Shown here: in pieces, positions 25,562-25,992 of the stretch | Layout of the letters: every line of letters begins with the position of its first letter | Numbering within the stretch: the first letter of the stretch is position 1 | Source: Gekko japonicus | Lineage: Eukaryota | Reading direction: 5' to 3' | Assembly: GCF_001447785.1 (NCBI RefSeq) | Contig: NW_015172015.1 | Span: 122,185-186,184, forward strand | DNA: 64,000 bases | Notes under the pieces: model-generated | Database searches by the model: none | The model's input: the letters and a program-made list of their open reading frames with translations, nothing else | Told to the model about the DNA's origin: nothing | Translations under genes and position numbers: made by a program

Positions 25562-25992
<431 letters not shown>

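What the first reader, a model, noticed from the sequence alone, without database searches (positions are those of the whole stretch)
25750..25775. MAFG zipper lesion creates an in-frame U_UUU_UUA slippery site whose -1 frame restores MAFG minus exactly one heptad
Seen: the sense strand reads GAA CTT CAT TTT TTA ATG CCA GCA TGA. Relative to canonical MAFG (AEL-QQEVEKLASE-NASM), 28 nt after CA are replaced by T6, a net loss of 22 nt. Frame 0 stops after 92 aa, keeping the basic region but only ~2 zipper positions. T_TTT_TTA (25768-25762) is a correctly phased X_XXY_YYZ heptamer, the same as the HIV-1 gag-pol site (established), and its -1 frame continues AAT GCC AGC ATG, the native frame. A -1 slip gives AEL-HF(L/F)-NASM, 7 residues shorter, so the L...M heptad register is kept. 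The downstream coding sequence remains highly conserved, so the gene does not look decayed. Only a weak hairpin (GCAUGAA/UUGAUGC) follows 6 nt downstream. Inference, in order of prior probability: local mis-assembly or homopolymer error; a real recent allele; programmed -1 frameshifting giving short and long small-Maf isoforms.
Basis: partly seen in the sequence, partly recalled or inferred. Interest (0 to 1): 0.85.

Follow-up and report, generated by a model that had tools for sequence, protein, structure and literature searches.

The report
Isolated frameshift lesion in gecko MAFG
The MAFG transcription-factor gene in this lizard (probably Japanese gecko) draft assembly has 30 coding bases replaced by 8, which breaks its reading frame; this is most likely an assembly error or a private null allele, not programmed ribosomal frameshifting.

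Summary
On the minus strand, the main MAFG coding exon has only 8 nt (CATTTTTT, 25770-25763) where every other small Maf has 10 codons (QQEVEKLASE). Frame 0 therefore stops at TGA 25752-25750 after 92 aa. The rest of the zipper and the C-terminus continue in the -1 frame. T_TTT_TTA (25768-25762) is in X_XXY_YYZ phase, and a -1 slip would give a protein 7 residues shorter.

The frameshifting reading has no other support:
- No RNA structure downstream folds better than shuffled sequence (z -0.4 to +1.2).
- All 17 squamate MAFG proteins recovered, two geckos among them, have an uninterrupted 150-aa exon product with at most one difference.
- Heptamer phase and rescue by the -1 frame are one coincidence, with odds of about 1 in 3.

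The locus is the true orthologue (SIRT7-MAFG-PYCR1 synteny), and both neighbouring genes look intact. Unchecked earlier notes of this scan call the genome the Japanese gecko draft and list many similar 5-28-nt lesions in housekeeping genes.

My odds are: assembly error about 0.6, real null allele about 0.33, programmed -1 frameshifting about 0.01.

Interest is low.

The parts
26076..26111 (-). MAFG first coding exon segment (MTTPNKGNKALK), followed by a GT donor at 26075-26074
   Evidence: Sequence read. It is identical to the N-terminus of the squamate MAFG proteins.
25993..26075 (-). Short 83-nt intron between the two MAFG coding exons (GT...AG)
   Evidence: Its presence shows this is the spliced genomic locus, not a retrocopy.
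25771..25992 (-). MAFG main coding exon, upstream part: extended homology region, basic region and start of the zipper (VKREPGEN...EKQKAEL)
   Evidence: Pfam bZIP_Maf, E 1.6e-27, covering profile positions 1-63 of 92 only. PDB MafG 3a5t_A, E 1.6e-36. 74 of 74 residues up to AEL match the squamate consensus.
25763..25770 (-). The lesion: 8 nt (CATTTTTT) in place of the 30 nt that encode QQEVEKLASE, a net loss of 22 nt
   Evidence: Every small-Maf representative with both anchors has a constant 16-residue spacing here.
25762..25768 (-). T_TTT_TTA heptamer in X_XXY_YYZ phase of frame 0. The T6 belongs to the lesion; the A is the first base of the native AAT (Asn) codon.
25750..25752 (-). Premature frame-0 stop codon TGA, ending a 92-aa product
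25562..25762 (-). Rest of the MAFG coding sequence in the -1 frame ([11 protein letters not shown]...KTDARS plus the native stop at 25564-25562)
   Evidence: PDB MafG 3a5t_A residues 81-107. 65 of 66 residues match the squamate consensus; the one difference is A to V in GKV[V]TTSV.

Best explanation
This is the true orthologous MAFG locus of a squamate, probably the Japanese gecko short-read draft assembly. The 30-for-8-nt replacement in the zipper is most likely a local assembly or consensus error, and the animal's real MAFG is the canonical 162-aa protein. The in-phase U_UUU_UUA heptamer is a by-product of a spurious T6 placed in front of the native AAT codon. It does not function as a recoding signal.
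For: 1. The lesion is the only defect in the gene. The ATG, the splice sites, the 83-nt intron and the native stop are intact. 139 of 140 flanking residues equal the squamate consensus.
2. MAFG is under extreme constraint. 17 squamate species, including the geckos Paroedura picta and Sphaerodactylus townsendi, share a 150-aa exon product with 0-1 differences, and all carry QQEVEKLASE. The 16-residue spacing is invariant in every small-Maf representative that has both anchors.
3. T6 cannot come from the deleted codons, so the lesion is a complex deletion-insertion. That is an unusual type of germline mutation.
4. The neighbours SIRT7 and PYCR1 are intact with AG/GT exon borders, so there is no regional decay.
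5. Unchecked notes from this scan list 32 'frameshift' findings in 766 windows of the same genome. They include 5-28-nt lesions in PLOD1, KHK, ABHD3, PHKG1, AP5B1, HOXA13, GTF2H5 and TMCO3. A follow-up agent found WDR83, WDR83OS and STX10 broken in a 'Japanese-gecko draft assembly'.
6. Gekko_japonicus_V1.1 is Illumina-only, with contig N50 29.6 kb and 335,470 contigs (PMC10776941).
7. Frameshifted MAFG models exist in other assemblies too, for example P0002.
Against: - No reads were examined, so the artefact is inferred, not shown.
- Short-read assemblers rarely invent a clean T6 filler inside GC-rich unique coding sequence.
- The other frameshift notes are also unchecked. If real, they could instead point to an individual or lineage with many true lesions.
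- From my own knowledge, MafG loss is tolerated in mice because MafK and MafF overlap with it in function, so a real null allele is biologically possible.
Confidence: 0.6

Rival explanations
1. The lesion is a real complex deletion-insertion allele of MAFG in the sequenced animal. It may be heterozygous, or polymorphic and recent in the species. It would act as a null: the 92-aa product keeps the basic region but has no zipper, so it can neither dimerise nor bind DNA, and MAFK and MAFF cover the loss. Any -1 slippage on U6A would be incidental and low.
For: - The sequence is clean and unambiguous in the assembly.
- Conserved flanks fit a very young lesion as well as they fit an artefact.
- The premature stop lies in the last exon, so by general knowledge the mRNA would escape nonsense-mediated decay.
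- From my own knowledge, small-Maf redundancy makes a MafG null viable in mice.
Against: - Constraint on this exon across 17 squamates is extreme.
- The same assembly is reported to hold many similar lesions in essential genes, far more than a healthy animal should carry (unchecked notes).
- The exact ORF products of the lesion-bearing sequence are absent from the 15-billion-protein collection. This is weak evidence.
Confidence: 0.33
2. The true sequence has T7 rather than T6 (a homopolymer miscount). That would be an in-frame replacement of 10 residues by 3 (AEL-HFF-NASM), a real MAFG allele one heptad shorter.
For: One extra T would restore the frame and keep the heptad register (arithmetic).
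Against: - Miscounts at a 6-7-nt homopolymer are uncommon in Illumina consensus.
- It still requires the unusual deletion-insertion to be real.
- No small Maf among roughly 40 representatives, and none of the 17 squamates, has a shortened spacing.
Confidence: 0.03
3. Programmed -1 ribosomal frameshifting at U_UUU_UUA yields a short, zipper-less isoform and a long isoform lacking one heptad, as an evolved regulatory device.
For: The heptamer is in phase, matches the HIV-1 gag-pol slippery site (PMC4373837), and its -1 frame is the native frame.
Against: - No stimulatory structure: folds of 37-122 nt downstream give z-scores from -0.4 to +1.2 against shuffles, and the best local hairpins are about -6 to -11 kcal/mol.
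- No conservation: all 17 squamates, including two geckos, have a plain uninterrupted ORF.
- Heptamer phase and the native -1 frame are one coincidence, with a chance of about 1/3.
- Cellular -1 frameshifting in vertebrates is scarcely documented. [quoted passage not shown]
Confidence: 0.01
4. MAFG is pseudogenised and lost in this species as a fixed change.
For: The frameshift removes the zipper.
Against: - There is a single lesion and no secondary stops or indels.
- Only 1 of 140 flanking residues has changed.
- Two other geckos keep the canonical gene.
- Both neighbouring genes are intact.
Confidence: 0.03

Closest known systems
Vertebrate MAFG (small Maf bZIP factor; solved structures 3A5T and 7X5E)
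   Same: - The extended homology and basic regions are identical.
- The downstream zipper and C-terminus are identical to squamate MAFG at 65 of 66 residues.
- Same two-coding-exon structure.
- SIRT7-MAFG-PYCR1 gene order, which I know from the human locus.
   Different: Ten zipper residues (QQEVEKLASE) are replaced by 8 nt, so the zipper is out of frame in the assembled sequence.
HIV-1 gag-pol -1 frameshift site (U_UUU_UUA plus stem-loop)
   Same: Identical slippery heptamer, in the correct phase.
   Different: - No stable stem-loop or pseudoknot downstream.
- No conservation in relatives.
- The frame-0 stop follows only three sense codons after the heptamer.
- The site arises from a lesion in a cellular gene rather than from an overlap of two long ORFs.
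Frameshifted gene models caused by draft-assembly indels (for example P0002, a 178-aa MAFG model frameshifted after NASMK)
   Same: An isolated frame break in an otherwise perfectly conserved MAFG coding exon.
   Different: The position and type of break differ. Here it is a complex 30-for-8-nt replacement rather than a small indel.

Membership tests
Small Maf / MAFG ortholog | Maf extended homology region plus basic region (Pfam bZIP_Maf) | tested here: met
   PF03131, E 1.6e-27, but only profile positions 1-63 of 92. 3a5t_A, E 1.6e-36.
Small Maf / MAFG ortholog | Leucine zipper contiguous with, and in frame with, the basic region, at the invariant spacing | tested here: not met
   Ten residues are missing and the remainder is in the -1 frame. 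The spacing is 16 in all representatives that have both anchors.
Small Maf / MAFG ortholog | Orthologous position (SIRT7 upstream, PYCR1 downstream) with an intron present | tested here: met
   SIRT7 exons at 251-6831 and PYCR1 exons at 51465-57618, both on the minus strand with AG/GT borders. The 83-nt MAFG intron is seen. The gene order is compared with the human locus from my own knowledge.
Programmed -1 ribosomal frameshift signal | X_XXY_YYZ slippery heptamer in frame-0 phase | tested here: met
   T_TTT_TTA at 25768-25762.
Programmed -1 ribosomal frameshift signal | Stable stem-loop or pseudoknot 5-9 nt downstream | tested here: not met
   Folds of 37, 46, 66, 86 and 122 nt give z-scores of -0.39, -0.32, +0.88, +0.99 and +1.23 against 200 shuffles. 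Pseudoknots were not modelled.
Programmed -1 ribosomal frameshift signal | Conservation of the signal and the two-frame arrangement in related species | tested here: not met
   17 squamate MAFG proteins have a single uninterrupted 150-aa exon product.
Programmed -1 ribosomal frameshift signal | Measured trans-frame product | not testable with these tools
   Needs a reporter assay, ribosome profiling or mass spectrometry.
Assembly artefact | Raw reads or an independent assembly disagree with the assembled sequence | not testable with these tools
Assembly artefact | Similar isolated lesions in other constrained genes of the same assembly | tested here: inconclusive
   32 'frameshift' notes in 766 windows of this genome, but these are unchecked AI notes. 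Within this window SIRT7 and PYCR1 are intact.

The most novel reading that the evidence does not exclude
The lesion is a real allele in the gecko, and spontaneous -1 slippage on U_UUU_UUA (or a true T7) yields some MAFG that lacks exactly one zipper heptad. That would be a natural test of how much zipper a small Maf needs to pair with CNC partners.
Probability: 0.03. Interest if true: 0.55.

Novelty: not a real feature. Interest (0 to 1): 0.1.

Why it matters
If it were true, it would be a rare case of -1 frameshifting in a vertebrate cellular gene that is not derived from a retroelement, and a natural zipper-length variant of a key NRF2/BACH partner. As it stands, it mainly warns that this draft assembly carries isolated frame-breaking lesions in strongly constrained genes. 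Claims of gene loss or recoding drawn from it need confirmation from reads.

Tried and rejected
- **Ortholog DNA:** I could therefore not make a nucleotide alignment, compute dN/dS or check the exact breakpoints.
- **Search with the 81-aa upstream piece:** no 92-aa or other HFLMPA-ending protein turned up. The tool's length window excludes full-length MAFG, so this says little.
- **Exact look-up of the window's 63-, 61- and 88-aa ORF products:** none is in the collection. This is uninformative, and the third begins with GTG and may have been translated with V.
- **Junction 16-mer elsewhere in the window:** only two 2-mismatch matches, at 18345 and 23578, and no evident template for the T6 junction.
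- **Paper search for 'Gekko japonicus' with 'MafG':** nothing found.
- **Regional decay, sex-chromosome haplotype, retrocopy or duplicate pseudogene:** rejected, because the intron, the synteny and both neighbouring genes are intact.

Full report
**Observation**

On the minus strand the window carries a small-Maf gene. The first coding segment runs from ATG 26111-26109 for 12 codons (MTTPNKGNKALK) and ends at a GT donor at 26075. An 83-nt intron follows. The main coding exon starts at 25992.

Frame 0 reads through the Maf extended homology and basic regions to ...EKQKAEL. It then reads HFLMPA and stops at TGA 25752-25750, giving a 92-aa product. The frame one base back reads [13 protein letters not shown]...KTDARS and stops at 25564-25562.

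- Pfam bZIP_Maf matches the upstream piece at E 1.6e-27, but only over profile positions 1-63 of 92.
- Against mouse MafG chain 3a5t_A, the upstream piece aligns to residues 4-70/71 and the downstream piece to residues 81-107.
- Ten residues are therefore absent, and only 8 nt (CATTTTTT, 25770-25763) stand in their place. That is a net loss of 22 nt.
- The heptamer T_TTT_TTA (25768-25762) is in X_XXY_YYZ phase. A -1 slip would give AEL-HF(L/F)-NASM, 7 residues shorter.

**What the locus is**

A phmmer search of 1.84 billion representatives gave 1305 hits. In none of the 150 listed hits did the best-scoring match extend past query residue 79, and in nearly all it ended at residue 73-77, about where the lesion starts.

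Every small-Maf representative that carries both anchors (MAFG-, MAFK- and MAFF-like) has exactly 16 residues between EKQKAEL and [10 protein letters not shown].

A second search, seeded with a full-length MAFG, and a cluster look-up recovered MAFG from 17 squamate species:
- Lizards: Sceloporus, Anolis, Pogona, Phrynocephalus, Hemicordylus, Podarcis, Zootoca, Varanus and Rhineura.
- Snakes: Thamnophis, Pantherophis, Erythrolamprus, Crotalus, Naja and Laticauda.
- Geckos: Paroedura picta and Sphaerodactylus townsendi.

All 17 have a 150-aa exon product with 0-1 differences, and all carry QQEVEKLASE. Outside the lesion, the window matches this consensus at 74 of 74 residues upstream and 65 of 66 downstream. 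The single difference is A to V in GKVVTTSV.

SIRT7 exons lie at 251-6831 and seven PYCR1 exons at 51465-57618. Both genes are on the minus strand, have AG/GT borders and show no frame breaks. From my own knowledge, this gene order matches the human SIRT7-MAFG-PYCR1 block. Together with the intron, it shows that this is the orthologous locus and not a retrocopy or a decaying duplicate.

CpG depletion (observed/expected 0.29) fits a vertebrate. The repeat content includes a 979-aa endonuclease plus reverse-transcriptase LINE ORF and CR1-like and L1-like pieces; by my own recollection this mix is typical of squamates. The MAFG match itself places the window among squamates.

**Test of the frameshifting reading**

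- *Structure.* The slippery heptamer is present and in phase, but the second defining element is missing. RNA folds of 37, 46, 66, 86 and 122 nt downstream give z-scores of -0.39, -0.32, +0.88, +0.99 and +1.23 against dinucleotide shuffles. The best local hairpins are only about -6 to -11 kcal/mol.
- *Conservation.* The third element, conservation, also fails. No relative has the two-frame arrangement.
- *Coincidence.* The coincidences that made the site striking are not independent. The T6 sits directly before the native AAT codon. The heptamer is in phase exactly when that A falls at codon position 3 of frame 0, and in that case the -1 frame is the native frame by construction. Given such an insertion, the chance is about 1/3, or 1/2 among frame-breaking outcomes. 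TTTTTTA itself occurs 40 times in the window.
- *Literature.* U UUU UUA acts together with a stem-loop in HIV-1 (PMC4373837). Human cellular -1 frameshifting cases are few. CCR5 is contested and gave no signal in a high-throughput reporter assay (PMC7297798).

From my own knowledge, a bare U6A gives at most about a percent of slippage. If the allele were real, only a trace of product lacking one heptad could arise, and only incidentally.

**Artefact or real allele**

The lesion is a complex deletion-insertion. No codon set for QQEVEKLASE can supply a T6, so the filler is foreign to the exon. Everything else in the gene is untouched. That fits an assembly error or a very young mutation, and does not fit long-standing loss.

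Earlier notes from this scan are unchecked AI notes, so I use them as leads only. They say the following:
- The genome is a Japanese-gecko draft assembly (follow-up s1-818634).
- There are 32 'frameshift' findings in 766 windows.
- Among them are 5-28-nt lesions in PLOD1, KHK, ABHD3, PHKG1, AP5B1, HOXA13 and GTF2H5.
- TMCO3 exon 9 is reported to carry a templated copy of exon 10.

That many isolated breaks in essential genes is more than a healthy animal should carry. It fits a short-read draft: Gekko_japonicus_V1.1 is Illumina-only, with contig N50 29.6 kb and 335,470 contigs (PMC10776941). Frameshifted MAFG models occur in other assemblies too (P0002).

Against the artefact reading:
- I have no reads.
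- A clean T6 in unique GC-rich coding sequence is not a typical short-read error.
- From my own knowledge, MafG loss is tolerated in mice because MafK and MafF overlap with it in function, so a private or heterozygous null allele is plausible.

**Limits of this analysis**

- Exact look-ups of the window's own ORF products found nothing, which is uninformative.

**Verdict**

My odds are:

| Explanation | Probability |
|---|---|
| Assembly or consensus error | about 0.6 |
| Real null allele | about 0.33 |
| True T7 in-frame variant | about 0.03 |
| Fixed loss in the species | about 0.03 |
| Programmed -1 frameshifting | about 0.01 |

The finding is ordinary and scores low. The decisive step is to lay raw reads, or the independent PacBio assembly, over 25700-25830.

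Noticed in passing
window 36373-39312 (+): Uninterrupted 979-aa ORF of a non-LTR retrotransposon with endonuclease (PF03372) and reverse transcriptase (PF00078) domains. From memory it looks RTE/BovB-like and may be a young, possibly active copy. A 278-aa fragment of the same family lies at 61444-62280 (-).
   Followed up: partly
window 32462-32590: A run of 129 N lies next to the GC-rich region at about 32.6-33.4 kb. An ORF there (32892-33395, minus strand) resembles the N-terminal extensions of the Laticauda and Anolis MAFG isoform models, so it is probably the MAFG 5' exon or promoter.
   Followed up: no
window 251-6831 (-) and 51465-57618 (-): SIRT7 (five exons seen; the gene runs off the window start) and PYCR1 (seven exons, about 313 aa plus split codons) flank MAFG. 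Both have canonical splice borders and no frame breaks.
   Followed up: partly
protein P0002 (178 aa; source species not shown): A MAFG model from another assembly retains an in-frame stretch between the two coding exons and is frameshifted after NASMK. This shows that frame-broken MAFG models occur elsewhere in public data.
   Followed up: no
protein P0151 (Saguinus oedipus, 132 aa): This annotated 'hypothetical protein' is a MAFG that jumps from CRVKR straight to [11 protein letters not shown], about 30 zipper residues short. It is probably an annotation or assembly artefact in that genome.
   Followed up: no
window 25598-25600 (-), codon in GKV[V]TTSV: This is the only amino-acid difference from the squamate MAFG consensus outside the lesion (Ala to Val). 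It could serve as a species marker for recognising this animal's MAFG transcripts in RNA-seq.
   Followed up: no
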